Assembly (NCBI RefSeq): GCF_021869535.1
Contig: NW_026262690.1
Location: 40,300,001 to 40,364,000, forward strand
Length of the DNA: 64,000 nucleotides
DNA from: Mytilus californianus
Taxonomy: Eukaryota
Reading direction: 5' to 3'
The notes beneath the pieces are model-generated. The model did no database searches. It saw only the letters and a list, made by a program, of their open reading frames with translations, and was not told where the DNA came from. The position numbers were made by a program, and so were the translations under genes. Positions 28,401 through 62,745 of the stretch are shown piece after piece (the first letter of the stretch is position 1; each line of letters begins with the position of its first letter).

Positions 28401-31400
28401 AAATATGAGACGCTTTGCCTAGTCGAAGACCTAAATTCGTCCATTTCATTTTTCCTTATCACAAAAAGAAGAACTCATTTTGTTTAAGTTTAAATCTTTT
28501 TTTATTGTCCTTTGTATTTGAATGAAAGGGCTATTCTGTTTAATGGTCTCAGCTGGCTTCCTGAAGGTTGCAATTTTGACATAAAACTATTGGTTTTTGG
28601 AAAAGATACCCTTTCCTACGATCAAAATGTGCAAATTGTTAAACAAGTCTTAAAATTTATGAAGAGATCCTTGGTGTTATAATATCAACATAGGTAAAAC
28701 GCACATCGTCATCCTAATCTCTGTCGTTCTTTCTTTGTCCCCTTTCCTTTTTCAGTATAGTTTAGTAATATTTATGTTATTTATATTATATAATGCTTGT
28801 TTACATTCAGTTCGTATTGTTATATATGTTGTATTGGGATGAAGACTTTATTAGTATGTTTTATTTGTATCTGATCCTATTTGCTGTGAACGAATTAAAA
28901 CATGTTTAAACCATGGAAGTATAATACTTCCATGTTTAAACCATGGAAGTATAATACTTCCATGTTTAAACTAAACAAAAACTGATGGACTTAGTAAAAC
29001 TATGCTGTAACATGGTGTATTATTTTGAGCTTAGCTTGTCTATTCCCCCATTAAAATAGAATGGAATTATTGTTTACCTTCCTTTGAAATCTTCTCTTTC
29101 TCTGGAGAAATCTGCTACTTGTTTTCTTAGCGTGGGACTCTCGTCGACAGGTTTTGGTGCTGACTTTACTTTCGTGAGTTCTTGCTCTAGACAACTTATC
29201 TTCAGTTGATAATTATTGATACTATTGACTAGTTCGTTGTTCTTATTTATTTCTTGTGTCAGCCTAATACAGAAACGTTAATGAATTACAACAAATAAAC
29301 ACAAAGTACACTGGATATGAATAGATCCCTGTTTAGAAACATTTACTAAATTGATTTAATTATGAAATCTTTTACATGTATCACTGAATCTTAGAAATTC
29401 AAATTCAAATTCAAAATTCAAATTCAAATTCTTTCTTTCCTAATCACAGGGCCCTTTCAGGCATTACAAAATTTAACACGATCATTCACACTTTCATACC
29501 AATCTTTCTCACTCCGCTCGCTCTGATTATGTTAATTAGATACAGTACATTAGAACATACAAAACAGTTATTTACCATATGAGTATAAACGACTCCGGGT
29601 GCGGGAGTTTCTCGCTGCATTGAAGACCCATTGGTGGCCTTCGGCTGTTGTCTGCTCTATGGTCGGGTTGTTGTCTCTTTGACACATTCCCCATTTCCAT
29701 TCTCAATTTTATTTTAAGTTCAGAAAGTGAATAAAGAGAGATAACTCTGAGTTTAATGTCGCAGCTTGAATTTTCAAGCAAAATCAATTTGATTTTCGTA
29801 GGAGGTAGTGGATTTAATGACTCTAGCTTATTTAAGATTTGCATTTGACCTTTTTTTTATGCCAATGATTTTCTATTAAAATAAAACATTACCTGTTTTC
29901 CAAATCCTTTATAGCTTGTAAATAGCTACCATTTTGTTGTTGATATTTGTTCTTTTCAGAAACAGTATCTTGAAGCTGTCGTCTGCAAAAAATCAAACTA
30001 GTATATATCGCTTGTATATTGACATGGTCTCCCTATTGCATATAATCTGTTATATTCTGCCTCCTAATCGTCTTAATAGAGAGTTTGTTTGCCTTAAAAA
30101 AATCATTTTCTTCACAGCGAACAACGAATATCAAACATTATGAAATCGTATAAACTTGTAAGTTAAATATAAATACCATTAAGAAGGCGGAATAACTCAA
30201 TAAATCTTTTCTGTTTACTGGGCTACATGGACTGAAGAAAGCAAAATCACATCATTTGATTAACCTTTTTGTATATTAATACAAGGGAACTTTCAAAGAA
30301 CGTAAAACTTTTTGTTGTGTCAGAAGCGCTGGATTTACTATCATTGGAGACGTTCATACCCAAAATATTGAGGGTCGAGGATATATAATTAACTTAACAA
30401 TTGAAGAAATACCAGTATATGATCAAGAGGTGCCAAAAAGAATATCCAAATCCATTTAAGGTTAGATTTGCCATAGGGAGTTGGAACCTTAGTTTTTTTA
30501 ATAATTCCTCAATTTAGCAATGGAGAATTTATAATAATTACAAAAACATGTTATAGATCTTGTCACTACCGAAGCACCGACTACTGTTTTGATAATACTT
30601 TCTGCGGGGACTAACAGTACAACAGCAATGATATAGACCGAGTGCTAGAAAAGTGAGAATAACTCTTATTAATAGATTCGTTACGTCTAAAGCGCTTTAA
30701 TGGGTTTACTTCAATTGGAACACTCATACCTAAAATATTAAAAGCCAAGGATGAACAACTATACATAAACACGTGATGATCAAAAGAGGTTTGCAAGAAA
30801 TATACAAATCCATCTATTTAAAGGTCAACTTTTAATGAAGAAATTGGAAATTTATAGTTACACGAATTTTGTTTTTTGAATTTTCTGTGTCATTTTAAAT
30901 GCTTTAAATCTTAGTACTTTGATTTATTGGGAGATAAAAATATAGTTTGAAACTGTAAACGATTTGATATTTTCCATTTGATAGAATGACATTCAAATGA
31001 ACAAAATTGTTAGCTTTAAGCGTAGTATTAATTTTCAGAGATACTGGAGTATTTTGTCTTATTATTTCATCCAGATTTGGCGCTTGCAGTTGCAACAAAA
31101 TGATTAGTTGTCAGCATCTTTTCAGTTTTTGAAAACATATTCAACTATATTATCAAGACATTCTAGAAACGAAAATTTCTTACCAAGAAGTCACACGAAT
31201 TTTGAATTTGACAAATATTTTATGATGTTTCTAGTGAAAATAAACATTTTCCACGGTTCATAATCATTGTAGAGAATTGAATAGAATATACAAACATTCT
31301 AAACATTTTAGATATATAACTTTTGATTAGTCAATGCAACAGAACGATTTAGTAGACTGTAGAACGACTTTAGACTAAATTTAAAAGTAGACCACATCTT

Positions 31401-34400
31401 TGTTTTTTTTTTTTTTTGTGCGAGTGTGTACGTATGTATGCTTTGCTTAAGAAGTGTGTTGATTATTTTAAGCCCTCTGGGTGTAATCTCAAAATATGTT
31501 CGTATCGTATAGAAACACATGTATTTCGCATGGATTTCGGTCTTATGCGTTTTGTACTACCACTGGGTAGGTACCGTTGTTTAGTGAACTATAAGTCCAC
31601 GAGAACGCAATCTGCAAAGTGCACGGTGCTTTTCTTCTGACAGGATTAAAATAATTCATTTTGTCTTAAAATTCCAGTTCACAAATATAGAATTGTATTT
31701 AAACTAAGGTTGCAACTTCCCCCAGGCAAGGATTGCATTCCATTCGACGGCTTTTTAATTAGTGACATATATACAGTCATTTAGTCCATGGTGGAGAGTT
31801 GTCTCATTGGCAATCATACGACAACATGTACATCTTATTTTCATATATTTTGGCTGGATTTGACACATGTTATTCCAAAAACATGTTACATCGGGATAAG
31901 ACAGGTTTTAATGTCTTTTACTTTTCAGAACTTTCAAACTCGATTTTAACAGAAAGATGGAACTTGCTTTGTTGAATAGTTTTGTGCATCTAAATGAAAT
32001 TTAGAAAAGTTATACGATAGAAATATTATTTAAGGTATGTTAACAATATACCGCCACCTTAGATTGTAAAATAGCAGTACACAATCGGTCTAGTTCTTTG
32101 CTGAAATTTGCAAATTTTGAGACAGATTGGCAATTAATGTGTAAGACTTTATTCAAATTAAGAAAAATAAGTAATGTATTGCATTATTTAGACTGTTTTA
32201 ACAAATACCAAATATTTGTTATGTTTGATTCAATTTTTCAACTTAGCCTTGTAAGGAGAGATACATCTTTCAATAAAAAAATAATATAAATGAATGTTCA
32301 TGAAATGTTCATGTTTTACTTGTAGCAAGAACACAAGTTCGGTGACACAATTTTTTATTTCTATTTTCTTAAAAGAACATTGTAAAACCTATCCCATAGA
32401 TTTCTGTTTTTATTCACAAGAAAAATGTTTGAAAAATAGGCACGGTGACCTTTACTTTTTATTATATTTTTGAAAAAAAATGATAAAATCTACATTTTGG
32501 CAGAGTATGAGAAAATTCTATCTGAAGAAATATTTAGTGATGACCGATACCTAAACCAATTGTTTGGTATCCCCATTGGGTATAAACTTTTTTTTAGTAT
32601 ATGAATAAAAGTAGATTCGCAGTTATCGTCATTGAAACAGCAACACAACGATAATAAAAAAACACCATCTGGTGGGTATTACTTGACACAAATTATCCAT
32701 TTCTATGTATTGAATTGACAGGTACAGAGTCAAACCGGATCAAACAGCCGTCGAAGTTTTAGCAGGTCATAAAATGTGATATTTACTGTATTTTGTAAAT
32801 AGACAGAAGGAAACTGTGTTCCAAAACAATCAATCAGTAAATTTTACATACTCCTTCTTCGTTAACTTTTTTATTTAGTAATTTTATAAACAAATATGTT
32901 TAACATATTCAAGTATATGTTACCTTATATTTTGAAGTTCAGATTCATACATTGCTTTCAGTTTTCCCAATTCATCTTCCAGTATCTTAATAGACTGGAT
33001 GAAAGCAGCAGAATCTGTTTGTCCATTTCTTTCTCCAAGCTGTCTTACTCTAGTGATGTATTCAGATAATCTATTATTCAGTCTCAGTAATTCATCCTTA
33101 TCGGACAATCGTCCGAATGAAGATTGTGGTCTGTAGTTGGTTGTTGGTGTTCCCGGGCTGTACTGTAAACTTTGTAGTCCCTGAGTTGCTGATCGTTCCA
33201 GTCCATGAGTTGCTGACCGTTCCAGTCCATGAGTTGCTGACCGTTCCAATGATCTCGACAAATCACCAACGTTTATTTTGCTCTGCTTATAAGTTGGGTT
33301 TAAGCTTTTCGACATAGAATTACTTTTAGCCAAAGATTTTCCTGGATAGCCATAGTATGTTCTGTAGGTCGTGTTGAAAGAACTTAGAAAAGATAAAATA
33401 AAAATACAACAGCCTCATAAAAAATGTTTCTAAAAAAATAATTTACTTTTCGTGAAAATTTGAAGCTAAATCAAATGAAAGAAACTAAGAAACTCTTGTC
33501 ATAGTTTTTCCACGATGGAACCTATCAGTAGGGACATTGAAATCATCTCATTTGTCTTGAAATTTTGTTCTAATTTGCCCCCTTCTGTCAAAGGTATCTG
33601 TCGTTTATTTAAAGGGTATACATCGTTAATCTAAAGGATAACACTACCTTCTTTTCATTTTTTAAAAAAATTATCTTAATTCATCACCAAATTCTTTAAA
33701 GGGAAAAAAATGAAAGACAGCCACTTTTCTGGTTTCTTACTTGGAACAGAATCCTTGTAATTCTGTTAGAATTGTGTGTTTTGACTAGATAATTCACCGT
33801 TTTCTTTGTAATGAAAATATTGAATTCATTTTAAACTGAGATGACCGCCAAATACACGCATATCAGTGCAGGAACACATTTTTACTAAGAGAGGAATAAA
33901 AGTCCTTACCAACGACGGTGTGAAGGAAGTCTGTTTGGTACAAATAAAGGAATTCACGAGAAAAAAATGCACATTTGGTCCCTACACAAATGCCGACTGT
34001 CTGATGAAAAACACATCAACTAAACATACATTTATTACAAATATATTGTCAAAAAAATTACAGTTTAAAAGAAGCTTTAGCTTAAATCAAAGTGCCTTTG
34101 CAAGTAACATTTGTTTCTTTCAGAAATAGAATACTTATCATACCTGTATCTTCTTTGACCATTTTTTTTTTTTAAATTTAACCTGTTCTTTAGTTAAAAA
34201 CATGAGACAAAAAGTTAGAGAAGTCAAGTGTAATTTTATTGCTTTAGGAGAGGGGCCTAGATTGTTCGTACTCTTCAGATCTTTTGAGAATCCACATATG
34301 ATTCATATCACCTCCATTGTAAACCTGGGTAGGGTTTTGATTGCTGTTTCGTAAAGCAACTGGCAGACCCGGTAATATGACATTGTTTGCTTTACACGCT

Positions 34401-37165
34401 TATATAACTTTTTCCTCCCCAGCAAAACAGTTCTTCATGTTTGGCCGAAAAAGCAAAAAAAACATAACACAGATTTTTGACAAACAAGGATGTCCTCTTG
34501 AATGAGTATCGTTGGGTACCTATGATGATTTTGCTGTGCCTTAAGTTAAAATTTCCGGTACGTCTGTCAGATATACCTAATAATCATACTTCTTTAAAGA
34601 TTCAATTTCTGTAGCTTAAAATTTGTATTTGTTTTTTGTTTTATTTTTTTGTACCATTAGATTTTTTTTATGAATTAACTAATTCTTCATTGTTGTTTGT
34701 TGTATCAACCTCAGAATTTCAGCTTGTTCATTTTTACAGGCAAAAATATAATCCTATGAATCATAATTTCTGTAATAAAACAAATCCCTATCGCTGATCA
34801 TTTTACAATTTACTAGTCTTGAGTGTTGTACATTTAATCGATGTTGAAAGTAAACCCTAGTCCCCAAAAATCAAGTGAATAAATTTTATAAAAAAAAAGT
34901 AACTAATTTAAAATGTATTGAAAAACAGTTTTTCTCTTTGAAAGCATAAAATTCATTGTAGTCATCTTGGAACTTGAAATTGATAGTGGGTTTACGCGAT
35001 ATATCTTGATAGGAAGTCAACGTTTGAACTTTTAATCACAACTCTATCAACTTCAACATTTTTTTAAAACTTGCCATAATTTGTTTTTGTTAATGGTTGA
35101 ATTTTACCATGAGCCAATCTCGAAGAAGACATCAGACACTTTTTAAAGAACTCCGGACGTCATTAACAAATTCGAATCGAGTTGTGTTATGAGACTTATA
35201 GTATTGTAGTCTCGCGGATTGTAATTGGTCACCAAGCTCATTGTTTGTATATATCTACTTCATTTAAAAATCTGATTCCTTGTCTGGATATGGCTATACT
35301 TTAGGTCCTTTTTGTTTTGATCAGCTCTACCAAAGTTTGTATTAGGTTTTGTATTTTCAAATATTTCGTCCTCGAGCATCACTGAAGAGACATTAATTAA
35401 TTGTCAAAATGCGCATCTGGTGCATAAAAATCGGTACTGTTAATGTTGTAATGGTTCTGAGAAATTGTATTAACCTTTGCTTCTTTTTGATTTTTTTCTG
35501 TATACCATTCTCTTTGAAATTGTCGGTTTATTGTTGATTTTAAAGTTTCAAGAGCAGTTCTTTATTTTACAATTGAAAATTGCTTCTATTTTACCAGGTT
35601 TGTACTTTGAGCTTACTCTCAGTCCATGTGATTATTCTTTGTTACGGTATTATTCAGCACTGTTTTATTTGTATGTCTTTGTTGTCTATGATACCGTATA
35701 TTATACTATGTATAGTATAGTGCATTGTCGGTTTGTAATTATGGTTATTCCACTTATCGAATTTAAAACGAAATGTTGAGTGAAAAAAACTTGATCAACC
35801 CTTCCACGTGTTTATCATAAAGATTTGTGCCTGTTCCAAGTCAGGGACATCGTCAGCAGAGGGGTCATTCCTTTATCCTTTGAGAATTAAGATTTATAGA
35901 TTCAAATATCTCTGTGAATTGTTGGGTAAGTGTTTCATTCACGAGTTTTAGTTCTTATTGTCGGTATTTTTATTATTGGTGAGCTTTCACATATCTGGCA
36001 TATAATAATCACGATTTTAATCTTCAATTCGGATTTAATAATGTAGGATATTTAACAAAATAAATGAAGTACGGACTGAAATTGGTATTATATTATTGAT
36101 GAAAATAAATATATGTAATAAGTCTTCACTTTTTTGTGCACCAATAGGTATATATATGTACGTTAAGATGTTATATTTGATATAAAAGTAGAATTTTTAT
36201 TACTTTTAATCTAAAACTAGTGAAAGTGTGTTCTCCTTGTTGAGGCCGTACGGTGGCATTTTATTACTTAGATCTTAGTAATTTGAACTCTGTTGGATAG
36301 TTGTCTCATTGACCCTCATACCACATCCCCATTATTTGTATACTCTAGAACCCAAACGACACGACGAGTATGGGATGGATGAACGTGAAGATAAAATCCT
36401 ATGAATATCTTATATTGCTTTTACTGCTGGATTTTGTAGTTGTAAGAATGTTCCAGTTCTTTTTCTTTTCGATTTCAAACAAATTATGAACGAAAGATAT
36501 TCAATTTAGTATCAAATTATAGTTATATACTGGTTATCAGTACCGTATAATTAACGGATATTTACAAACTTTCTCACCAATAACAGAACACCGACTCGTT
36601 TCACTAAAATACTTACGAGAAAAAATACTGAACTCGTTTTAAGTCCTGAACATTTCAGTATAGCTAAAGAATCAATTTGTGTCTAAAATAAAATTCTGAA
36701 AAGAGCCCCATATAACCGGCAACCGCAATTTAAAAAAAAAAGCCGCAATCAATATGTTTTCATGATCAATATTCATTAATTTAGATTTTTGTATGATATG
36801 TGCATGTTGCCAGACCTTTGTCCTATGCTAAACAATTTCCTCGTGTACTTTATGACTATGGGTCAAATGGTTTTATTTAACAGTCAAATCCCAATTTCTA
36901 ATCTGTATCCAACATACAACGTATTAACACTGCATGTAAATTTGGCTCTCCGTGTTCCAATTTCTTTTTCCGTTAAATATCACGGAAAACAATTTATCTC
37001 CTACATTATATTTCTGACGGAACGTTAACGGGAATATTTTAATGACATAAATAGTTATTAAAGGCTTGAAAAATATATTTCCTAAAATTATCCCCTATGG
37101 TCGGGTAGATTTCGTTGCCCCATGGTATAAAAGTCTTACCTTGGTTGGTACATGCCATAATTCAT
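25486..37165 (-). CDS. Intermediate filament protein IF-B (cytoplasmic IF/lamin-type rod, no lamin tail domain). Exons 37165-37140, 33382-32924, 29263-29078, 28225-27946, 27457-27332, 26807-26587, 25534-25486; final exon uncertain; at least 449 aa
   Basis: Coil 1A motif DKDELLRLNNRLSEYITRVRQL, coil 2 start IPQLLRQVRQAAEED, rod end LKAEIEAMKILLSEEEKR. All introns are GT-AG with consistent phases. The 126-nt and 221-nt exons match the conserved LMNA/vimentin coil-2 exon sizes. Rod exon sizes equal those of IF-A. Confidence 0.9.
27583..27850 (-). mobile_element. tRNA-derived SINE in IF-B intron 4
   Basis: Head GGGGCCTCGATGGCCGAGTGG (A box), GAGTTCGAACCCC (B box), conserved centre ttctccgggcactccggcttcctccacc (V/Meta-type domain, not distinguished), (caat)n-like tail. 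Confidence 0.85.
28905..28971. mobile_element. Two tandem 23-bp hairpin inserts CATGGAAGTATAATACTTCCATG separated and flanked by tttaaac
   Basis: tttaaac 28905-28911, 28935-28941, 28965-28971; inserts 28912-28934 and 28942-28964; 10-bp inverted arms. Confidence 0.7.
34260..34370 (-). mobile_element. Short decayed Naiad RT fragment in IF-B intron 1
   Basis: DMNHMWILKRSEE versus GVNQMWILKNSKD at 16266-16305. Confidence 0.4.
35376..35423 (+). ncRNA. Second-family hammerhead with a mutated core (GAAA to AAAA)
   Basis: gcatca CTGAAGA GACA-loop-TGTC AAAA T-GCGC-A TC tggtgc; 6-bp stem I intact. Confidence 0.65.
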
Positions 37166-38828
37166 TTTCCCGGAGAAATGGATGTCAGTTTACACTAGCA
37201 ACATCAGTGTATTGATGATATTACAATGTTTGTGCATGGATAGTTTGTATCTATGGTTTCCACTCCATAAATAAAAATAAACTTTAAATTTGCATATTTA
37301 TTTGATTTTTTCTGTTCAGGGTTTCTGATATAAATAAGATGCACAACCAGTCAGTTGTTATGAACGCATCGGTTTGTTTGTTGATAGGCGTATCTGTGTA
37401 CTTTAGATTTATCTTATAAACATACTCTTCCGTTAATGGTTAAGTTTAATTTCTACTAATACCTAAGTATAAAAAGCAATTTATTTTGAAAACAAAATAT
37501 CGATGAATTCATCAGGCATAAAATAAGCTCAGTTTGATCAGATGTTTTCTTCGATGGCAAAATAATGTGATAATTCCCCTGAAAATCGATCTCTCCGACA
37601 TTATTCTTAGGTGACATATACAATAATTGAACATACTGCCGTCAATTGTTCTAGCCATGCTTCTTTTTCCTGATTTGACATGTTTTTGTTTAAGTTTACA
37701 GCAATTATAGTTTATAAATATCAGTGGATTGGATATTCCAGCATGTTATGTACTTATTGCTATACTTTGATTTGTTACCACGCAACCTAGAATAACACTG
37801 GTAAAAGTTAAGCAGGAAATCGGATATCTTGTTCTTCAAAATTTATATAAACATTTAAAATCAACAACTAATACAAAACATATCATGTCAAGACAAAATC
37901 CTCTCCATTTTAAAAAAAAATTATAATAAGAAGCACTGGATCGTTAAGCTTTAATAGGTTTTCTTCCGTATGTTAAAACCTTTCAGAAATGTTTATTTGT
38001 AGATTTGTTTATTAAAGAAGCTCAATATTCAAAACCTAATTTAAGAATAAAAGTTAAAGGGTAAATTAAATTTTCACACATGCCTAAGTATCAAAAGTTT
38101 TTTTTATTTATGAAAAAAAGATATTGATAAATTTATCCGGCATGCAATACACACGGTTTGATCAAATACTATGTCGTATGCCAAAGGTATTATAGGAGAA
38201 TGACAGTCCACCAACAACGGTACAGGGGCTTAGACAGGGACCGAAGAATGGTATCTTTTTATTTTTCAAAGCATTATATCTATATAAGTAATCATATAAG
38301 GTTAATCAATAAAAACAATTGAATTATATAAAGTTATGTCATATTCTATTGTTGCTCATAACCTGTCATCTTATTTATATGTTCCAAGTACTGAAATTAG
38401 TATCATAAAAAAGTATAACAAAAATACCGAATATTGACCAAATTGGGTGAACAACCCAAACAGACATAATAGGTTGATGTGACAATACAATTGGGATCCA
38501 GCAGCCAAAACTGTGTAAACTTACATCACAGACATTAAAAAAAATTCAAACAAACATACAAATTTATCTAACTAGACGCAAACAAAAATGTTGTAATGAA
38601 AACAACACGTTAAAAATGTCACTGCGTCCAAAGTTTGACCATGACGGTCAATTAAAAAAGTTTTTGTCGTTGATAGTACATACCGTATATAGTATACACT
38701 TTCTCGATAAAGTTAAAATTAAGTAAATACAAATACAAGGGTAAACAAAAATAAAAACAACACTGTAAAAAACATTTGTGTCCCAATCGCACCACAGGTC
38801 CCACCTGCACCAGGAATGCCCAAAGTAA

Positions 38829-43693: not shown

Positions 43694-43735
<42 letters not shown>

Positions 43736-52700: not shown

Positions 52701-54318
52701 CCCAGTGAACGTACGTAATGAGCTCTTTATCTTCTCTACATATTGCAATATATTTTGTTTGTAATTTGATGACAGTATCTAGAAAAACCATCACATATTA
52801 CACTTTTATCTCCCATTTGTTTCAACAAAATGCATTTCCATGTTTAACCAAATGAAAATGCAAACAACTTAAGCATTAAGCCAGCTTAAATTACTGTATG
52901 GCATTTTTTTGCTAAAATGGGAAATCGAAAATACAGGAGAACGGTTCAATTCGGCGCTAAAATGGGCTGTCTGTGCTCAAATGCCCCCAAGTATTTTAAT
53001 TTTCTTTTCGCTTAAATGTCCTGTACCCTGTGTTATACAGTAGCAATTTTCTAAGAGCACAAGTTCTTGTAGACAGGTTACTCGAGGTTTAGTTGCTGCA
53101 CAAGCCCTTGCATGATAGTTACGGATTTGTTCAAGTATGCATTCCACCCAACCATACAGACGTCCCTCAGCAAGACGACCTGTATGTACTTGTGTGTTCA
53201 GAAAGCCTAATATACTCCCACACTTGATGTTCATTAAGTGTACGGGTTCAGCATGATAACATTGTTGACGCTTACAGGCATCTTGGCGACCGTTGTGTAG
53301 ATCACTGATTTTTAAAAGACAAAAGATTGTCAAGTTTGCAAGTATTTTTGTCAACCCTCTCACAATGCAAGATAGGCAGATAACAATTCTTATTGAAACT
53401 GGCGGGATTTTGAAACATACAAATTTTAGGCTTAACAATGGTCTTGGGGGACACACAGAGACTTCGAAGTATGAATTTAAAAAAAAAACTACGAGTCTCA
53501 TCATAATGTTACTTTTCATGTTGGGGCATCGGTGGCCATTGGTATAAGAAATCCAACTACTGTATCACTAGTCTGTCAACACTGAGTTTGTGAGTTCGAA
53601 TCTCGCTCATGGCAGGTGCGTCATAGTCTAATCTTGGTTGACTAGGATTATCAGTTTTCCTACCGAAGGTCGGAGGTTGTCTCCGGGCATTCCGGCTCCC
53701 TCCACCAGTAAAAACTGACCGCCACAAAATAGCTAATAGTGCTGAAAGTGGCGTTAAACACAATCAAGCAATCAATCATCTTTTCGTGTTGTTGTTTGGT
53801 TTGTGAAGCATAAATACTACATAAATATCTCAACTGTAGTGAGATCAATAGTACTTGTTTGTTCTATCGCGATTTTGTTTTACATTCACCCTGATTTAAC
53901 GTCATTCTAAAACTGGTTGTTGTTCTGTCCCCAATAAATCTTCATGTGGTCTGTTCACAATTAACGTCTCAAAATGATCTTTAAGTCGAAGTATCGGATC
54001 AATTTTGATCTTGCATCATTTATTGTTGAGTGTCGATGCATATACGTTTTTATTTAATATTTCAATCATTTGGTGTACTCTGGAGATTGCATGGGTGTTA
54101 TTTTCATGTCAGTAACTTGATTTCTAGCAGTTTTTATATCAAGATCAACACTTGTCAAAATAGCTATACTTTTGAAATACTTAAACAAATATTATTCGAA
54201 AAACGAAAAAATATATATAACTTCAGCTCCTGGTTTAGTCATGTCAGTTTTTCTTATGGTTCTTTTCTTACCTTGGATTTTGCTTTCTTCCATAATTTTG
54301 ATTCATCCATGGAAACAT
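41640..54318 (-). CDS. Intermediate filament protein IF-A, predicted 549 aa. Exons 54318-54272, 49219-48728, 46320-46135, 45341-45062, 44308-44183, 43564-43344, 41937-41640
   Basis: Coil 1A EDKAELQRLNDRLSDYIAKVRQL. DILRQVRHAAEDELKKHQSDIESRYGKS aligns without gaps to lamin A [28 protein letters not shown], with the same phase-0 intron after it. Rod end EIEAMKMLLAEEERR. Exons sum to 1650 nt in frame. First exon (NYGRKQNP AG|gtaaga) is homologous to the IF-B first exon (NYGMYQP AG|gtaaga). Confidence 0.92.
42749..42943 (-). mobile_element. Naiad-type RT C-terminal fragment fused to an R1 repeat
   Basis: SAYGLYISQLIQYSRDCVSY...LLLTGTLLEQGFLVVKLKPSL matches the RT C-terminus of the other copies. 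Confidence 0.7.
47265..47645. mobile_element. Probable SINE-like fragment in IF-A intron 2
   Basis: GC-richer island with cttaatgtccagtggcaaatatctcatgcat and ggggtttaacatccccattccgaccggac; no A/B boxes recovered. Confidence 0.35.
49770..50420. repeat. About 50-bp minisatellite with a 251-bp (5-mer) higher-order duplication
   Basis: cccctaaatgtatcttcc at 49910 and 50161; the monomer variants repeat in the same order. Confidence 0.88.
50506..50593. repeat. 22-bp unit x4
   Basis: ggccaaattcgagtttaaaaat repeated. Confidence 0.9.
53523..53778 (+). mobile_element. tRNA-derived SINE, same family, in IF-A intron 1
   Basis: ggggcatcggtggcc...gagttcgaatc...ctccgggcattccggctccctccacc...gtggcgttaaacac plus caatc tail. 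Confidence 0.8.
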
Positions 54319-55916
54319 ATTCGAAAATCTTGATCTGCCTTAGATATATATCTATCGAATTCAGTCTAGAAGTTTACAAGAGCTTTACAATACTGAACCC
54401 TTTTTAGAATGACGACTGTAACCAGGAGGTAGATCGTTAACATGAGAAATATGCATAAATAGTTCTGCTGATCTGTATTCATTTATTTATGTCCTTAAAT
54501 ACAGAGAACTTAGTATATAAAATACTTACGAATGTGTTATAGTAGCCAAATATTCGGTTATTCACCTTTTGCTTAATTAAATTTGTACTCTCTGTTTCCC
54601 AAAAAGACCATAGACACTAGATACTTTTCGATAGAAAATAAATCAGTAATGATAAAATATTCTCTCACAGTATTAAAAAAAAATTCAGGTACATTGTTTA
54701 TACAATTATGAAAATTATCTTTATTTTCTACTCTAACAAGGCGCATGTGAAATGCAAATGTAACACACTTTATTGTTTGATTACAGTCAAATATACAGTA
54801 TAGGTTAGCTGTAATTATATTACATGTATAAAGTCGGTCCTTAGAAAACTTGAAAGATGCTTTTAAGAATTAACTCTTTTTACAGAGTTGTTGTAAAGTA
54901 TAGTGATACAATAAAGTATATAAAACACAGGTATAATAGGACTTCTATTAAAAAGACTTTTTGAAAATAGTTACTTCTATTTCTTTATTTAACAAAATAA
55001 AAGAAAACAATAGCAAGCTCCAAATTTTCGTTAAAAACTGATAAAGACTTGTGTGTATGTTTTTACTATTTTTTTTGTTTTCGAATGAATGTGATACAAA
55101 TCAGGAATATTACAGCGATTATCTGAAATGAACATATTTTTTACTTAAATCAGGGCGTCAGTTTTTTCGTTTGAATTGTTTTACATTTGTCATTTCGGGG
55201 ACTTTTATAGCTGACTATGTGGTATGGGTTTTACTCATTGTTGAAGGCAGTACGGTGACCTATAGTTTTTAATTTCTGTGTTATTTGGTCTCTTGTGGAG
55301 AGTTGTCTCATTGCCAATGATACCAGATCTTCTTGTTTTTATATATAATATTTTCTCTTTGCAAAGTTTGTGTTATATTTTTTTCTCTGTGTTAATCTTG
55401 AGCTGAAAATGAGCCAAAGACAAAATATGTACTAGTAAAATTCAGGTGTTGTGTTAACTAAGACGTTTTTTTTTATTTTAATTGTTATTTTAATGTGCTT
55501 ATTACATACACTACCAATTTAAATAAACATAGCTTAATAGCTTAATAAGTTAATATGCATTTTTTCATACCGGGCCTTATATTGATTACTATATTGTATG
55601 GGTTTTGACCATTGTTAAAGGCAGTACGGTGGCCTGTAATTGTTCACATCTTAGTCCTTTTGATCTATGAATGGTAGTACTAGTGTCTTATTGCCAACGA
55701 TGCAACATCTACTTTTTATATATTGAACATTTTCTTTTTTTAGATGTGATATGTTAATAACTAGATATAAAGTGATTTACGTTTAACTTGTAGGCATTAT
55801 ATGTTTGAAATGATCTTGCATGTACTGCGGAAAGGTAACACATTCACTTTTTATCTCTTTTGATGGTTCATTCAATGTTCAAGAGATTTTCTATGATACC
55901 AAATTCGGTGTGTTTA

Positions 55917-56183
55917 TTGATTGATTGATTGATTGGTGTTTAACGCCACTTTCAACACTATTGTGCTATTTCGTGGCGGTCAGTTTTTATTGGTGGAGGA
56001 AGCCGGAGTGCCCAGAGGGAACCACCGACCTTCGGTAGGAAAAATGACAATCCTAGTCAATTAAGATTGAGTCGAGTGCACCTGCCACGTGCGGGATTCA
56101 AACTCACAACCTCAGTGTTGACTGGCTAGTGATACAGCAGTTCGACTACTTAGACCACTACCCCACCGAGGCCCAGAGGCCCC
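55917..56183 (-). mobile_element. tRNA-derived SINE, same family, with a 12-bp TSD, 160 bp downstream of the FAHD1 stop
   Basis: tcggtgtgttta at 55905-55916 and 56184-56195; (attg)n tail. Confidence 0.88.
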
Positions 56184-56342
56184 TCGGTGTGTTTAAATCA
56201 TACAAATGGCAAAATTATTGGAACAGTCTCTTGAAGCATCATACAGGTCGAGCATACATACAGTTACCAACAGAATCTTCACAGATCTAAAGTTTGAAAG
56301 ACAGACAGATTTAGTACTCGAATTTTTATTTTTGTGACATTC

Positions 56343-59300
56343 TCATTTTGCAACAGAAAATTTCATGGACACTATATCAGCAAGTCCTGCTTCCATGATT
56401 TGTCCTTCTGTCACTGGCCCTTGACCGTCAGGTGTTCCTGTCAAAACAACATCTCCTTCCTCTAATGTTATATATTTACTGATGTAAGAAATGACTTCTG
56501 GGACAGAGAATATCATATCAGAGGTACTATCGTCCTGTTTTATAACGCCATCTACTTTTAACCATAACCTTAAATCTTGATAATTTGGAACTTTTTCTCT
56601 TTCAATAAAGTCGCTAACTGGACAGGAAGTGTCAAATCCTTTGCTAAGAAACCATGGCCGAGAATTAGCTTTTGCATCGTTGTGAAAGTCTTTAGCGGTC
56701 ATATCTAGAGCAAGAACAAAGCCACCAATATAATCATCGACATCTGAGACAGCAACGTTGGAACATTTCTGCTTTATGACAACTCCTAGTTCAACTTCAT
56801 GGAACAATAGATTACAACCTTCAGGAATCTGTAAGAAAAATAGAAACATATATTAATTCACAGTCAAGTGTATATATATTTATACATATACAGATTTTCA
56901 TCCGACCAGCATGTTACTTCCACCCACACATAAAAAGCCCAAAATATACCATTTAAGTAGTGTCCCCTGTATCAAATTAATATAATTCAAGTACTAACGC
57001 TTAAGTTGAATTTCTCGTGCTGATTGTTGAAAAAGCGATACGAAATGAAAAGTTTGATAGATAATGCTTTCAGTCTTAACTTACTAAGTGATTTTCTCGA
57101 ATTAACATATAAAAAATGCAAATGATTCGATACATCACGATTTAATATGTTCACGAATTGATTTCCCGCCTTTTCTACCCAACCATGTACCGTATGATGT
57201 ATCATGCTTAAGCCATCGTTGAAGCCATTATTCAAAGAGTTGTTGTGATTATTGTTATGTTTTAAAAGAATTACATACACAAATTGATTGTCCTTCGGTA
57301 ATATATGCAGTTGTTGGCTTTGCAAACAGGCTTGGCGTCTTCGGATTAGGTATTCCTTGAGCAGCCGTAAGACCTCTGTAAAATCAAACTTAATTAAGAT
57401 TGTTTATAAGTCTTAAAACAGTGTATGTATTTCATTAAGCTTTCAAATATTCTAACAGACTTAGTCCAGTATAGCGTTTACTGGTGAGGCTTGGTGGTTT
57501 TGATTGCCTCGATTTGGACATCAATCTCTAACATTCAAACACCTTCAAACAGATACACAAAGTAGTCTACTTAGATGCATCAATTGCGCAATCAAGATTA
57601 ACATGAGAAGAAAAATGATCGAGAAATGGAACTATCGTGAGTTATGGCATTAGGTGAAGTACAGTGACTCTACGAGGAAGATTATTTTAGTGTTTTTTTT
57701 TTGTATTTGTATTTAAGTATAGTAAATATGACATTGTTATAGTAGAGGCAATCAAAACCAAATAAGTCGAAGAAAGACCGACAGTACCATGGCCAAAACC
57801 AAATAAGTCGAAGGAAGACCGACAGTACCATGGCCTAAACAAATAAGTCGAAGAAAGACCGACAGTACCATGGCCAAAACAAATAAGTCGAAGAAAGACC
57901 GACAGTACCATGGCCAAAACAAATAAGTCGAAGAAAGACCGACAGTACCATGGCCAAAACAAATAAGTCGAAGAAAGACAGACAGTACCATGGCCAAAAC
58001 AAATAAGTCGAAGAAAGACCAACAGTACCATGGCCAAAACAAATAAGTGAGAAGAAAGACCGACAGTACCATGGCCAAAACAAATAAGTGAGAAGAAAGA
58101 CCGACAGTACCATGGCCAAAACAAATAGACAAAAAAAAAAAGCCAACAAATCACCACACAGAAAAATTGAGAAACATAAACTAATAAAATAAACCAGGGG
58201 TGATCTCAAGTGATCCTACAGGATTAACAGTTCCTGTATATCTAGAGTGACGTTACATCCGTCGTTTTACTTTATGTTATATTCTTTGGCGATAATGCTT
58301 CATACCATAGCAGATTGGTCGATGATTCTTAAGTAACCATAAGACATAACCATTTTTAAAGCATCAACATAAATCATTTATTATATATTATATATTTCAC
58401 AACCATTAACATTGTCGAATGTGAAAGTTTGAAATCGAGAAGTGTTTTGTGATAAAGATGGACAAGATCATGACCGATAGAAACAACACATACATTGAAC
58501 ATTAAATAATCACAAGAAACAGTACAGCACAGACTTTTAAAAACTTGTATGAACTCGTTTGATCCAACTCCCTCAGACAAAGTTTACCAGAGATGGATTT
58601 GGCTATTCTTTTTGGTCTCTTTTTGTCTTATAGCTCTTCACGTATTCAAGTAATTATACATCCATCGCCTACATATGTTTTGGTTTGACAGTTCGCGATG
58701 ATGGCAAATCAAGAAAAGTGAGTTGGACGCACCAAATAACAATCTAATGAAAATATAGATCTTTGATTTCGTTATACTCATTGACACAAGTTACGCTATA
58801 TCCATATTTTAATTAGATTGCACCAAATAAATAAGTTGTTATTTTTATTTGATACGGATTCCTGTTCGTGTATAGTGTTTGACTACTTATTGAATATAAC
58901 TACTAATAAATATTACTCTACCACATATGGATGTGGTGTACGGCGACTTATAGTTGCTTCCATGTTGGTCTCTTTCAGAACGCTCGATAGTACTACCGCT
59001 TTTTACGAGGGTTCACCTTACGAATCGTTTAGTTTGTATGGTTTTGTTTATTAACATCTCGTTTGTTTTCGAAATTGTTTCGTGTTGGTGCGTTTGTCCT
59101 ACTATCTGCAGGTGTTTTTATCGTCCCTTGATCTCTGTAGTAGTCTAAAAAGGTTATCTTCCATTTTATTTTGTTCAAATCTAGATTTCACAATAATATT
59201 CCAAGTGGTTTTTTTTTGGCAGACCGAATTCTTTAAAAATTCTTCAAAAAAGTACTTTCCTTTTTTTTTACAAAATAAAGTATCATTCCAAGTTAGTCTT

Positions 59301-59679
59301 AAAAGTTTATTTGAGTGGATAATGCAACACGCAAACATAAAGTTGTTGTAGACAATATTCAGATCAACGTAATTTTTTAAATAACAAAATATCGCCATAT
59401 TTTCATATCAAATATTTGATTAAATGTAAATTAAACGAAAAATAAATATAAAGTGTGAAAAGGGGTGCCATTGTGGCATCAGAGTTAAAATGAACCAAAA
59501 AATGAGAAATATGATATCAAGTACCTTAATGATTATTCCAGGTCCTTTGTCTCACCTGTTGAATGGTTACATCAAATAACTGATTTTTATAGAATAGAAG
59601 GTTATACTAACTTGTAGTTTCGGCAGACTGCAACTACTTTCTTCCCAATTTCTCTAAAATGTTTCAATCGTTCAGTCAT
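56343..59679 (-). CDS. FAHD1: FAHD1-like fumarylacetoacetate hydrolase domain protein (acylpyruvase/oxaloacetate decarboxylase family), 216 aa. Exons 59679-59612, 57375-57279, 56828-56343
   Basis: MTERLKHFREIGKKVVAVCRNYK|GLTAAQGIPNPKTPSLFAKPTTAYITEGQSIC|IPEGCNLLFHEVELGVV...LDMTAKD...PWFLSKGFDTSCPVS...GDVVLTGTP. Exons 68+97+486 = 651 nt in frame, GT-AG introns, metal-binding ExE...D and the Lys123 equivalent present. Confidence 0.95.
57760..58122. repeat. 40-bp minisatellite x9 in FAHD1 intron 1
   Basis: aaataagtcgaagaaagaccgacagtaccatggccaaaac repeated; accounts for the spurious overlapping ORFs at 57687-58209. Confidence 0.95.
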
Positions 59680-60071
59680 CGCGATGGCCAACTACCAATG
59701 TACCATACATGTATATGAACCTGTTGATTTGTGTTTCACCTTTCTTAAATTTATTATGAATTATACGTGTTATCAATCTCAACTTTGATTATGTTATCTC
59801 ATCTTAAATTATTTTGTTTGTTTAAAGGCACTCACCGTATGTCGGTTGATATCCTCAATCAAGATTTTATTAGCGGTTACAGTAAAAAAAATATTTTTAA
59901 TTATGCTCTGATTTTCTAAATACTTTGGGTTACCGAGTCTTCATGATATGTTCATGATGTTATACTGAATACCTGCTGAAATCATAAGTATATCTTTAAA
60001 TAAAGCTGAAAATTTAAATTATTGTTCCCCCCATGTCTATTGTTAGCTAATGTGGAGTGTTAGCTGTATAT

Positions 60072-60272
60072 GAGGGGCCTGATGGGTTATTTTCGTTCTT
60101 CGTGATCGGCGCATTTTCGCTATCGTGATCCGTTTTTCTACAGATTTAATTTTTTTCTATATTTTCGTGATCCGTGATCATGAAAATTTATTTTTTGTGA
60201 ATCGTGATTGACAAAAAAATCAACTCGTGAATCGTGATGAGACCCCCCCCCCCTCCCCCCATCAGGCCCCTC
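60072..60272. mobile_element. 201-bp MITE, 15-bp perfect TIRs, 6-bp TSD gtatat
   Basis: gaggggcctgatggg (60072-60086) / cccatcaggcccctc (60258-60272); gtatat at 60066-60071 and 60273-60278; internal cgtgat repeats. Confidence 0.85.
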
Positions 60273-61537
60273 GTATATTCCACCACTAGATGAATCGTCG
60301 TCCGTTTCTGATCCATTCTTCTGGAGAATCATTTAATTTATAAAAAAAAAACAAATTTAGCAGATGAATCAATTATGTTATCAGTTTCACTGAGTGAGTT
60401 TTGTAAAGTAGTATTCTCATTTCTTGTATTTTCCCAAAAGCATGGTCAGAGAGCTTTGTTACCCTTGTTTTTTTTAAGCGGTGACAGAGCAGACACATGA
60501 ACTCTTAATTTGAACAGCCTCTTCTATGTAAATGATTTTAGTACACATTATAAATCGGCAGATGGCCTTCAGACATCCGTAGTATGGATAGACTTTCAGA
60601 ATATTGTAAAATGTGGGGGTTGAGTTTAATAGGAAAAAGACAAAATGTGAAGCCTGCAATAAGTTGGAAAAGGTATATTAAAAGAAATCCAATATAATAA
60701 TAATGTCATAGAAAATGCCAAAAACAACCGCTACATCGGAGTTATATTTCACTGCTCTGACAGTTTTAAAGAAGTCATACAATCCAAATACCAAAAAGGC
60801 TTAAAAGCATATTTCAAACATTGCAAAGCATTTGAGAATCAAAAACCTAAGATGAAAAGTAAAATCACAAAAATACCGAACTCCGAGGGAAATCAATACG
60901 GAAAGTCCCTAATCTAATGGCAAAACCGAAAGCTCAAACACATCAGACGAATGGATAACAACTGTCATATTCCTGACTTGGTACAGGCATTTTCTTATGT
61001 AGAAAATGGTGGATTAAACCTGGTTTTTTAGCTAGCTTAACCTCTCACTTGTATGACAGTCGCATAAAATTCCATTATATTGACAACGATGTGTAAACAA
61101 AACAAACAGACATAATAGGCAAAAATGTCAAAAATAGGGGTATAGCAGTCAATATTGTGTTATAATCTTAATCACTATAAAAACAAACAAATATTTAACA
61201 AAGAAACACAAAAAGGCATACAGACAAAGCACATTCGTATAAACGAAAGACGAGAATACAAAAATCTACCATAGCACAATAACACAATGACATGTTTGCA
61301 TGTATTTGACTATTTAATTGTATAGCACTAAGCTAGAGTTGGGGGATTCTCCAAAAAGATACTTCACATACAGTAACACTTTCAGCTATCATTATTATTT
61401 TTCAAAATATATATAAAAATCTTAAACAAGAAAAGTTTCCGATTTATAAATGTATATTCATATTTATTATGTGTAAATTGGAAAACTACAAATATTGATG
61501 TTATGGAAGATGTCGGTCATTATCTATTTTTTTCTAA

Positions 61538-61585
61538 GCTTAAGCAAGGATTTGTATAGTATACTATACAAATCCTTGGCTTAAG
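61538..61585. mobile_element. 34-bp perfect palindrome (17+17) flanked by 7-bp direct repeat gcttaag
   Basis: CAAGGATTTGTATAGTA|TACTATACAAATCCTTG at 61545-61578; gcttaag at 61538-61544 and 61579-61585. Confidence 0.75.
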
Positions 61586-62180
61586 TTAAAATATCTTAAA
61601 ATACTAGACAAATTTAAAGAACAATAGTGATGTCTTATTATCTGCATGCCATCAATGTAGACATACATAAAAAAAAACAGTCTACATAGTGTGCTGTACA
61701 TAGTTTGTTGAAATACAATATAACAACAAAATTTTCTCTACAAAATTACACTTATACTCTAATATTATTAGAGGTGTTCCTGTCTATAGAAAGCTAATAA
61801 AAAGAAGAAATAGGAATCATCAGAACAGCATGAGCCGGACAAATCATCATGGCTAGGAAAAACTTCTATTCATTTTTTGACATCTTGATAAAAATACTTA
61901 AAGATTATTAAATTATAAATTTAAAGACATATTTTTTCATAGTTAAGATTGAAATATAACAAAATTTGGAAAATGAGATTTTTCTGATATGTTAAAATAT
62001 TAAAGAGTAATAAATTGCGTACTGTATATAGATTGTTTGAATCTCAATTTAAATTTGAACCATATTTAGATTTCATTGTGATTTCTTTCGACTAAGTACA
62101 CATAAATAAGAAATATAACTTAGAAGATAAATACCCTTTGATGTGAACGGCATAATATGAACACTTCATCATTTATACCA

Positions 62181-62227
62181 TTTATACCAGAGACATATAA
62201 TACATGCATATATGTCTCTGTTTATAC
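62181..62227. mobile_element. 33-bp hairpin insert flanked by 7-bp direct repeat tttatac
   Basis: CAGAGACATATA-atacatgca-TATATGTCTCTG at 62188-62220; tttatac at 62181-62187 and 62221-62227. Confidence 0.72.
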
Positions 62228-62686
62228 CGTTTAAGATTTTGAGACGAAGTTGGGGCGAATGGATTTTTGGGCGAAAATTGACACGCTAGTTTTAAATGTG
62301 AGGGCCTAGAATTTATTAGTTCTCCATCTTCATAAAAATGGAATTTCAAAAAAAAGCCAAATAACGCACAGCAAAAATAAAAACCAGAAAAAATGTCATT
62401 TATAAAAGTTGAGTATTAGTTAGATGACATGACGAAATATTGTGGCGAATGTTTTTTGGGACGAAAACGACAAGCTGAAACTCTTCTTTAAGAAGGGTTG
62501 AAAAAGGTATAAAAAGCCGTAAAATATATTTTTCTGGTGTTGTTGTGTTGCTGTTTGAACAACTCTACATGACTTACGAAAGAAATATTGATTAGCTAGC
62601 AATAGGAAATGAATCCTCTAACGTAAATATTCTGCTTAAATTATATGAGTGGAACACGATTTTTGTATTTCACAAAATTGACCTTA

Positions 62687-62745
62687 ACTAAACCTGGGAA
62701 CAGTATATCTAACTCAATATAATATATATATGTTCCTGACTAAAC
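62687..62745. mobile_element. 45-bp degenerate hairpin insert flanked by 7-bp direct repeat actaaac
   Basis: ctgggaacagtatat...atatatgttcctg at 62694-62738; actaaac at 62687-62693 and 62739-62745. Confidence 0.55.

What the first reader, a model, noticed from the sequence alone, without database searches (positions are those of the whole stretch)
28905..62745. Micro-hairpin inserts at four sites with different arms but one grammar: CA..TG ends, TATA at arm positions about 9-14, 7-bp TSD
Seen: inserts of 23 bp (28912, doubled), 34 bp (61545), 33 bp (62188) and 45 bp (62694). Arms CATGGAAGTA, CAAGGATTTGTATAGTA, CAGAGACATATA and C(A)GG(G)AACATATAT; the last has a diverged left end. TSDs tttaaac, gcttaag, tttatac and actaaac all have T at position 3 and A at position 6. 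Inference: several distinct families of one transposon superfamily with a shared AT-rich target preference left scars at about 4 sites per 64 kb. That would be a large, normally unannotated class of genome-wide micro-palindromes, too short for standard repeat finders.
Basis: partly seen in the sequence, partly recalled or inferred. Interest (0 to 1): 0.75.

Follow-up and report, generated by a model that had tools for sequence, protein, structure and literature searches.

The report
Transposon excision scars in mussel DNA
The four tiny palindromes are scars left when cut-and-paste jumping genes related to the fruit-fly P element left these spots; thousands of such scars in this genome show where each family's enzyme cuts, and one of the four is still absent in other individuals.

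Summary
All four inserts are real and far beyond chance. Each is a short remnant of the two ends of a cut-and-paste transposon, still flanked by the 7-bp target duplication made on insertion.

Genome-wide, with exact 10-nt arms and a gap of 30 nt or less, the four arm families give at least 823, 1621, 2493 and 1241 such scars. Reversed-pattern controls give 0.

- **Junctions:** they are highly diverse, and retained arms stop sharply at 18 nt in one family and about 20 nt in another.
- **Two different ends:** the family with unlike ends gives left+right scars only (1241). Left+left and right+right give 0, so these are not hairpins.
- **Not mobile:** idiosyncratic junctions, including sites 3 and 4, are unique in 1.65 Gb.
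- **Source element:** for site 2's family, a 13-kb element with 38-bp terminal repeats and an exact 7-bp duplication carries a P-element-type transposase.
- **Still polymorphic:** site 2 is absent, with one intact target copy, in contigs from two other samples.

The target rule is T2/A6 with G1/C7, not T3/A6. Site 4's "diverged" left arm is that family's normal left end. Site 2's 17+17 is a trimmed join, not the full cut length.

No transposase was found for the other three families. Earlier notes of this scan report the same kind of scar elsewhere in this genome.

The parts
28905..28971 (.). Site 1: family-1 scar, doubled. The layout is 7-bp target copy, 23-bp scar (11+12 nt of the two element ends, no filler), target copy, identical scar, target copy. 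That is a 30-bp unit repeated twice plus one more target copy.
   Evidence: Family 1 has 823 scar sites genome-wide against 0 for the control. This exact 23-mer is at 14 loci and is doubled only here. Its other loci have different exact 7-bp duplications.
61538..61585 (.). Site 2: family-2 scar. A perfect 34-bp palindrome (17+17 nt of the element ends) lies between two copies of the 7-bp target.
   Evidence: Family 2 has 1621 scar sites against 0 for the control. The exact 34-mer is at 11 loci, each with its own 7-bp duplication. An empty-site allele, with 61537 joined to 61579, is seen in contigs of two other samples (records 5 and 19).
62172..62180 (.). An extra copy of site 3's 7-bp target, followed by the two bases CA, directly upstream of site 3. 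It may be a minimal second scar from re-use of the same target.
   Evidence: Read. Not tested further.
62181..62227 (.). Site 3: family-3 scar. The 33-bp insert holds about 17 nt of one end, a short filler and about 12 nt of the other end, between two target copies.
   Evidence: Family 3 has 2493 scar sites against 0 for the control. This exact 33-mer is unique in the genome at up to 1 mismatch. It is present in contigs of X1 and X19 (records 7 and 22).
62687..62745 (.). Site 4: family-4 scar. The 45-bp insert holds the full 20-nt left end, about 18 nt of the unlike right end, and about 7 nt of AT-rich filler or duplication, between two target copies.
   Evidence: Family 4 left+right scars number 652+589 against 0 for the control. 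This exact 45-mer is unique in the genome at up to 1 mismatch. It is present in an X2 contig (record 30).

Best explanation
These are excision footprints of P-element-superfamily DNA transposons.

1. An element inserted and duplicated 7 bp of target.
2. Later its transposase cut it out with a long staggered cut. One strand was cut exactly at the element boundary, the other about 18-20 nt inside the element. Each chromosomal flank therefore kept a single-stranded tail made of the element's first 18-20 nt.
3. Host end-joining then joined the two tails. Joins were blunt, through short self-complementary stretches such as TA or TATA inside the tails, after trimming, or with a few filler bases.
4. 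The product is target copy, left-end remnant, right-end remnant, target copy. It reads as a near-palindrome because the element's two ends are inverted repeats.
5. The scars cannot move. They accumulate, and now outnumber the elements that made them.

Shown here: the anatomy, the family sizes, the sharp arm-length edge, the left+right rule, the uniqueness of odd junctions, the link of family 2 to a P-type transposase, and the polymorphism of site 2.

Inferred: the staggered cut itself and the repair route, by analogy with the Drosophila P element's 17-nt stagger.

Site 1's doubling is most likely a later 30-bp tandem duplication between target copies.
For: (1) Exact 7-bp duplications at all four sites. 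The same holds at 28 of 32 and 19 of 23 other scars at up to 1 mismatch.

(2) Scar counts against controls: 823, 1621, 2493 and 1241 against 0.

(3) A sharp length edge.
- Family 2: gap 0-30 gives 1621, gap 31-60 gives 44.
- Family 3: 2493 against 89.
- Family 3b arms: at least 17 nt 928, at least 18 nt 882, at least 19 nt 26.
- Family 2 arms: at least 20 nt 524, at least 22 nt 26.

(4) Junctions are very diverse, with microhomology joins and fillers, and no variant dominates. The site 2 form is 11 of 1621.

(5) For the family with unlike ends: left+right 1241, left+left 0, right+right 0.

(6) Odd junctions do not spread.
- The site 3 and site 4 sequences are unique in the genome.
- A complex junction found at 8 loci has identical flanks, so these are paralogous copies.

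(7) True element ends are far fewer than scars: 197 extended family-2 ends and 559 family-3 ends.

(8) The 13-kb family-2 element.
- It has identical 38-bp terminal repeats and an exact 7-bp duplication.
- It holds an 885-aa ORF with the RNase H N-terminal, GTP-binding insertion and RNase H C-terminal domains.
- The ORF's only solved relative is the Drosophila P transposase, E = 4e-15.

(9) Non-coding 0.7-, 4.9-, 4.2- and 5.2-kb elements have the same ends. The 4.9- and 4.2-kb ones have exact 7-bp duplications, and the 0.7-kb one matches at 6 of 7.

(10) An empty-site allele at site 2 in two samples from two studies.

(11) The 17-nt staggered cleavage of the P element is published (PMC7776569; PMC10983969).
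Against: - No occupied allele (full element at a scar site) was seen, so excision at these four sites is inferred, not observed.
- The cut offset is read from scars, not measured.
- No THAP DNA-binding domain was detected in the family-2 ORF.
- At 13 kb, the transposase-bearing element is much larger than needed, and I read only 3.5 kb of its interior.
- No transposase was linked to families 1, 3 and 4. The larger family-3 copies I fetched are non-coding, or carry a nested retroelement.
- A minority of scars keep arms longer than the edge: 26 of 524 and 26 of 882. These need another route, probably interrupted template-copying repair.
- Scar counts include paralogous copies, so independent events are fewer than the raw numbers.
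Confidence: 0.88

Rival explanations
1. The palindromes are themselves the smallest possible non-autonomous transposons. They would be elements made of terminal repeats only, which the transposase moves around and which make a new 7-bp duplication at each landing.
For: Each copy has a 7-bp duplication and both element ends. Identical simple forms occur at several unrelated loci with different duplications: the 34-mer at 9 independent loci and the 23-mer at about 11. Site 2 is an insertion relative to the empty allele.
Against: - Junctions are extremely diverse and no master form dominates.
- Filler-containing forms are unique in 1.65 Gb or are paralogous copies with identical flanks.
- The forms that recur are exactly the filler-free joins that repair would produce repeatedly.
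- The arms end at a fixed position and lack the shared subterminal motif (positions about 22-33) seen in real elements.
- Two ends 20-45 bp apart on one duplex could hardly be paired by a transposase. This last point is inference.
Confidence: 0.05
2. The scars are extreme internal-deletion derivatives. After excision the gap was repaired by copying from a sister or homologous copy of the element. Copying stopped early on both sides and the two short new strands were joined. No long staggered cut is needed.
For: Rare scars keep 22-40 nt of an end, including subterminal sequence. Internally deleted elements of many sizes exist.
Against: Interrupted copying predicts a smooth decline of arm length. 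The observed edge is abrupt, and it falls at a different fixed position in each family: 882 to 26 between arm positions 18 and 19 in family 3b, and 524 to 26 between positions 20 and 22 in family 2. Gap 31-60 classes are 28- to 37-fold rarer than gap 0-30.
Confidence: 0.05
3. They are chance palindromes or slippage products of AT-rich DNA, or hairpin or snap-back products made from one DNA end.
For: The genome is 32% G+C. The arms contain TA-rich stretches, and some scars hold expanded TA runs.
Against: - Reversed-pattern controls are 0 for every family.
- Only k=7 flanking repeats are enriched over shuffles.
- The asymmetric family gives 1241 left+right and 0 left+left or right+right. A one-ended hairpin origin cannot produce that.
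Confidence: 0.01

Closest known systems
Drosophila P element and its excision footprints (17-nt staggered donor cleavage; Beall and Rio 1997, as cited in PMC7776569 and PMC10983969)
   Same: - The transposase has an RNase H fold interrupted by a GTP-binding insertion domain.
- The ends are terminal inverted repeats starting with CA.
- The scars keep both target copies plus up to a fixed number of bases from each element end, as expected from a long staggered cut followed by end-joining.
   Different: - The target duplication is 7 bp, not 8.
- The inferred offset is 18 nt (family 3b) and about 20 nt (family 2), not 17.
- No THAP domain was detected in the one ORF examined.
- The host is a mollusc-type animal genome, with several co-existing families.
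- These are natural germline scars in the thousands, not laboratory revertants.
Galileo and 1360 (Hoppel), the 7-bp-duplication members of the P superfamily in Drosophila (PMC4168063)
   Same: The duplication is 7 bp. The palindromic target consensus has G, T at positions 1, 2 and A, C at positions 6, 7: published GTANTAC, and here T2 and A6 at 73%, G1 and C7 at 37%. Insertion sites are AT-rich.
   Different: Galileo has very long, internally repetitive terminal repeats, while the elements here have repeats of about 30-40 bp. The Galileo paper read here (PMC4168063) does not mention excision scars (0 occurrences of 'footprint'). Protein relatedness to Galileo specifically was not tested.
Miniature inverted-repeat elements (MITEs)
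   Same: Short, non-coding, bounded by inverted repeats and target duplications, and present in thousands of copies.
   Different: MITEs are copies of a master sequence with a conserved interior, and they move. These scars have no interior. They show a different junction at almost every locus, and their odd variants are unique.

Membership tests
P-element superfamily of DNA transposons (family 2, the family of site 2) | Transposase with an RNase H-like catalytic domain split by a GTP-binding insertion domain | tested here: met
   The L043 ORF (885 aa) matches PF21787 at 9e-21, PF21788 at 3e-19 and PF21789 at 7.6e-6, all above their cut-offs. Its only PDB match is P element transposase 6p5a, E = 4e-15.
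P-element superfamily of DNA transposons (family 2, the family of site 2) | The transposase gene lies inside an element bounded by the family's terminal inverted repeats and a target duplication | tested here: met
   Extended ends at C165:50966354 (+) and C165:50979344 (-) bracket the ORF. The 38-bp terminal repeats are identical, and the same 7-mer flanks both sides. The 4.9-kb non-coding copy shares about 120 bp with each terminus.
P-element superfamily of DNA transposons (family 2, the family of site 2) | Target-site duplication of 7-8 bp | tested here: met
   7 bp at all window sites, at full elements and at most scars. k=6 and k=8 give nothing.
P-element superfamily of DNA transposons (family 2, the family of site 2) | N-terminal THAP zinc-finger DNA-binding domain | tested here: inconclusive
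   Pfam finds no family in the first 426 aa, even at E up to 5. The domain may lie in an upstream exon that I did not read.
P-element superfamily of DNA transposons (family 2, the family of site 2) | Unusually long staggered cleavage at the element ends (17 nt in Drosophila) | tested here: met
   Indirect, read from the scars. Retained arms stop at about 20 nt in family 2 (524 against 26) and at 18 nt in family 3b (882 against 26). This is not a biochemical measurement.
P-element superfamily of DNA transposons (family 2, the family of site 2) | GTP requirement for transposition | not testable with these tools
   Only the presence of the GTP-binding insertion domain is shown.
P-element superfamily (families 1, 3 and 4, the families of sites 1, 3 and 4) | Association of these terminal repeats with a P-type transposase | tested here: inconclusive
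   - Family-3 copies of 4.2, 5.2 and 8.4 kb have no transposase ORF.
- The young L044 transposase family does not lie inside family-3b end pairs.
- Supporting resemblance only: the same 7-bp duplication, the same scar anatomy, the same target logo, a subterminal motif shared between families 2 and 3, and shared bases 11-20 between family 1 and the right end of family 4.
Galileo-like clade of the P superfamily | 7-bp duplication with palindromic consensus GTANTAC | tested here: met
   Logo of 47 independent targets: T2 and A6 at 73% (34% expected), G1 and C7 at 37% (16% expected), 46 of 47 with T2 or A6. Published consensus in PMC4168063. The inner positions 3 and 5 are only weakly biased here.
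MITE or other self-mobile element | The same internal sequence present at many non-paralogous loci | tested here: not met
   The site 3 and site 4 sequences are unique. A complex junction at 8 loci has identical flanks. Only filler-free joins recur, and at about 1% of their family.

The most novel reading that the evidence does not exclude
P-type excision scars form a large, unannotated and still-growing sequence class in this genome. There are at least 6,000 sites for just these four families, roughly ten scars per surviving element. Together they are a natural record from which each uncharacterised transposase's cut position (18 nt, about 20 nt, against the fly's 17) and the germline end-joining habits of a mollusc can be read directly.
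Probability: 0.65. Interest if true: 0.55.

Novelty: new member of a known kind. Interest (0 to 1): 0.45.

Why it matters
P-element excision footprints are textbook products of laboratory crosses in flies. Here the same product appears as a natural genome-wide deposit in another phylum. That has four practical consequences.

1. Repeat annotation misses thousands of 20-45 bp palindromes. These could otherwise be mistaken for regulatory hairpins, tiny mobile elements or assembly artefacts.
2. The abrupt end of the retained arms gives the enzyme's cut position for each family without biochemistry. It suggests that the long stagger is a conserved trait of the superfamily whose length varies (17, 18, about 20 nt).
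3. The junction spectrum is a ready-made readout of germline double-strand-break repair in a bivalve-type genome.
4. The ratio of scars to elements, and polymorphic scars such as site 2, show that these families have excised often and recently. That bears on the very high structural polymorphism reported for such genomes.

Tried and rejected
- **Transposase loci:** I looked for the four arms inside the 20 transposase loci returned by the family search and found none. The loci (about 3.4 kb) were too short to reach the element ends.
- **Boundary by similarity:** I tried to find an element boundary from where copies stop aligning. No clear terminus came out.
- **L044-L048 family:** I tested whether this young transposase family is the family-3b autonomous element. 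It is not. Its roughly 5 copies lie elsewhere.
- **Larger family-3 copies:** I fetched them hoping for a transposase. The 4.2- and 5.2-kb copies have no ORF, and the 8.4-kb copy holds a nested reverse-transcriptase element. tblastn with three P-type proteins found no remnants in the non-coding elements.
- **hAT considered:** the ends fit its loose terminal motif and the target has a T...A pattern. I rejected it because the duplication is 7 bp, not 8. hAT excision does not leave 18-20 nt of each end (my own knowledge). The linked enzyme is P-type.
- **Typed list:** I redid the logo by reference.
- **Site 4 alleles:** read laying could not resolve the allele state. Two contigs stop aligning exactly at 62686, but their remaining ~115 nt were not shown.
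- **Not done:** the species was not verified, and no whole-genome de novo census was possible with the pattern tool's 100-row listing.


Full report
OBSERVATION. The four sites are exactly as described. Each is a short insert with inverted-repeat arms starting CA and ending TG (site 4 starts CT), between two exact copies of a 7-bp sequence. Site 1 (28905-28971) holds the 23-bp insert twice, with three copies of the 7-mer. Site 2 (61538-61585) holds a perfect 34-bp palindrome. Site 3 (62181-62227) holds 33 bp and site 4 (62687-62745) holds 45 bp.

This is not chance. In the window, a scan for a k-bp direct repeat flanking an 18-60 bp insert with perfect arms gives 5 hits at k=7 and 0-1 for every other k from 2 to 10. 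Over 231 kb of held DNA with the targeted centres masked, k=7 gives 9 hits against 2,0,0,0,0 in shuffles, and k=6 and k=8 give none. That scan also turned up two further arm families.

GENOME-WIDE FAMILIES. The window is G000:C110:40300001-40364000 of a 1.65-Gb, 32% G+C assembly. I name the arm families F1 to F4 after sites 1 to 4. Requiring both arms as exact 10-mers with 0-30 nt between them gives these counts:
- F1: 823 sites
- F2: 1621 sites
- F3: 2493 sites
- F4: 652+589 sites

The reversed-pattern control is 0 in every case. On the loci I could read, 28 of 32 scars have flanking 7-mers that agree at up to 1 mismatch, as do 19 of 23 further ones. The raw counts include some paralogous copies, so independent events are somewhat fewer.

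WHAT THE SCARS LOOK LIKE. Junctions differ from locus to locus. They include blunt joins of two full arms, joins through self-complementary TA or TATA inside the arms, trimmed arms, and short fillers that are often copied from nearby arm sequence. No form dominates. Site 2's 34-mer is at 11 loci of 1621, and site 1's 23-mer is at 14 loci of 823.

The length distribution has a hard upper edge:
- F2 gives 1621 sites at gap 0-30 but 44 at gap 31-60.
- F3 gives 2493 against 89.
- Many of the long cases are one family's scar, with its own 7-bp duplication, nested inside another family's scar.

Using the true element sequence as a ruler, F3b arms of at least 17, 18 and 19 nt number 928, 882 and 26. 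About half of the 26 can equally be read as 18+17 joins. F2 arms of at least 20 and 22 nt number 524 and 26, and perfect 20+20 joins recur. So the retained remnant ends at 18 nt in F3b and about 20 nt in F2. By eye, F1 and F4 complete joins are 20+20 and 20+19. Site 2's 17+17 is therefore a join of two arms each trimmed by 3 nt. Its match to the fly's number is a coincidence.

NOT HAIRPINS. F4 has unlike ends. It appears unchanged in 1241 scars and in a scar nested at C88:5367342. Left+right combinations number 1241, while left+left' and right'+right number 0. Every scar therefore holds one copy of each end of a two-ended element. A snap-back or one-ended hairpin origin is excluded.

NOT MOBILE. 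If the palindromes moved as such, idiosyncratic junctions would spread. They do not.
- Site 3's 33-mer and site 4's 45-mer are unique in 1.65 Gb even at 1 mismatch.
- One complex 46-bp F2 junction does occur at 8 loci, but all 8 have identical flanks for 40 bp on both sides. It is one scar carried along by a larger repeat.
- The forms that recur at unrelated loci with different duplications are the filler-free joins that repair would make again and again.

THE ELEMENTS BEHIND THE SCARS. Rare long-armed scars and a 0.7-kb element (L022) gave the sequence beyond the edge.

A 28-nt extended F2 end occurs only 103+94 times, and a 31-nt extended F3 end 280+279 times. These ends pair up as elements:
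- F2: 0.7, 1.5, about 4.9 (recurrent), 8.5-9.7 and 13 kb.
- F3: about 2.2-2.6 and 4.2-4.4 kb (recurrent).

Scars thus outnumber elements by roughly 16 to 1 in F2 and 9 to 1 in F3. The elements I read in full (L063, L066, L068) have exact 7-bp duplications. F2 and F3 share a subterminal motif at about positions 22-33, just inside the edge. It is a candidate protein-binding site, and it is absent from the scars.

THE ENZYME. A search of the genome for the P-type RNase H N-terminal domain gave 51 hits. The best hit, L043 at C165:50973932, lies between the extended F2 ends at C165:50966354 (+) and C165:50979344 (-). With about 20 such end pairs covering about 130 kb of 1.65 Gb, and 51 hits, I expect about 0.004 coincidences by chance.

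The two ends have identical 38-bp terminal repeats, and the same 7-mer lies outside both, so this is one insertion. Its 885-aa ORF has the RNase H N-terminal, GTP-binding insertion and RNase H C-terminal domains, all above Pfam's cut-offs. Its only relative among solved structures is the Drosophila P element transposase, E = 4e-15.

No THAP domain was found. It may sit in an unread upstream exon. The 4.9-kb non-coding F2 copy shares about 120 bp with each terminus of the 13-kb element.

For F1, F3 and F4 I found no transposase. Their assignment to the same superfamily rests on the shared duplication length, scar anatomy, target logo and partial end similarity.

TARGET PREFERENCE. Across 47 independent target copies the logo is symmetric:
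- T at position 2 and A at position 6, each 73% (34% expected).
- G at 1 and C at 7, each 37% (16% expected).
- 46 of 47 have T2 or A6, and 23 have both.

This matches the outer positions of the Galileo consensus GTANTAC for its 7-bp duplication (PMC4168063).

POLYMORPHISM. I laid contigs of three samples of the same species label, and one of a related label, on 61000-63000.
- In X1 (record 5) and X19 (record 19), from different studies, a contig runs from 61537 straight to 61579. It skips exactly 41 bp, which is one target copy plus the 34-bp palindrome. These individuals carry the intact empty site, so site 2 is a recent event.
- Site 3 is present in X1 and X19, and site 4 is present in X2.
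- Two contigs stop aligning exactly at 62686, the base before site 4. What follows was not shown, so site 4's state in those samples is open.

Contigs show presence, not absence, and no occupied allele was seen.

MECHANISM. The published P element reaction cuts one strand at the element boundary and the other 17 nt inside, leaving 17-nt 3' tails (PMC7776569; PMC10983969). The donor break is repaired by homologous recombination or by end-joining.

The same scheme, with an offset of 18-20 nt, explains every feature seen here:
- both target copies are kept;
- each scar has one left and one right remnant;
- there is a family-specific hard edge;
- joins occur at self-complementary TA or TATA stretches, because the two tails are identical rather than complementary;
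- fillers are present.

Whether it has a role in cleavage is unknown.

The few scars with longer arms probably come from interrupted template-copying repair.

Site 1's doubling is most simply a later 30-bp tandem duplication between target copies. Two independent repairs would rarely give the same uncommon 23-bp product, and the doubling is unique among that product's 14 loci. The extra target copy plus CA just upstream of site 3 (62172-62180) could be a minimal second scar from re-use of the same target. I did not test this.

COMPARISON AND NOVELTY. This works like P element excision. For F2 it passes the membership tests I could run, except THAP, which is inconclusive. It differs from the fly element in duplication length (7 bp, as in Galileo and 1360), inferred offset, host and scale.

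My searches of the held library found no paper describing natural, genome-wide P-type scars in a mollusc. That library is incomplete.

Earlier notes of this scan describe the same kind of scar at other places in this genome. They call the organism a Mytilus mussel. I did not verify the species. My conclusions rest on the tests above, which agree with those notes.

I class the finding as a new member of a known kind. The mechanism is familiar. The abundance, the readable cut offsets and the ongoing activity are the new content.

Noticed in passing
window 62172-62180: A third copy of site 3's 7-bp target, followed by just CA, sits directly upstream of the scar. It may be a minimal second scar from re-use of the same target.
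   Followed up: no
window 61000-61300: Contigs of all four runs pile up here at summed depths of 10^5 to 10^6, with many internal joints. It is an extremely high-copy repeat next to site 2.
   Followed up: no
window 62686/62687: Contigs X1 record 7 and X19 record 22 both stop aligning exactly at the base before site 4's first target copy, with about 115 nt left over. These samples may carry another allele (empty or occupied) at site 4.
   Followed up: partly
L081, L090, L091 (G000:C57:1277743, C132:31333522, C132:69299787): Here the family-1 23-mer is the centre of a longer palindrome. Its flanks are inverted repeats of each other for at least 20 bp in L081 and L091, not direct 7-bp repeats. 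It looks like a fold-back duplication of one flank plus one arm, in a repeated unit.
   Followed up: no
G000:C88:105579817, C88:5367342, C13:56687250 and others: Scars of families 1, 3 and 4, each with its own 7-bp duplication, lie nested inside family-2 scars. So these elements insert into each other's remnants or ends.
   Followed up: partly
L092-L099 (8 loci, e.g. G000:C2:527886): One family-2 scar with a complex 46-bp junction is carried as a passenger by a larger repeat, present at 8 or more loci with identical flanks. The host repeat was not identified.
   Followed up: partly
L022:1518-1534, L063:66-78, L064:72-88: Families 2 and 3 share a subterminal motif (GATTGG or GATTCG, then a short A-rich stretch and CT) at about positions 22-33 of the end, just inside the scar edge. 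It is a candidate transposase-binding site.
   Followed up: no
L044:1-286; arrays such as G000:C35:39196288-39208436: The first 286 bp of the L044 transposase locus belong to a tandem array family with a period of about 539 bp, found in long arrays on several contigs.
   Followed up: no
L068:142-3120: A 992-aa ORF with a reverse transcriptase domain lies nested inside a family-3b element. It doubles that element's size to 8.4 kb.
   Followed up: partly
L034:1147-1197 and L029:411-450: Two further scar-like inserts flanked by 7-bp duplications have arms of other families, one of them without the TATA-like stretch.
   Followed up: no
held DNA, 231 kb: Short palindromic inserts flanked by 4-bp direct repeats are mildly enriched, 9 against 2-5 in shuffles. 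They may be scars of another transposon class.
   Followed up: no
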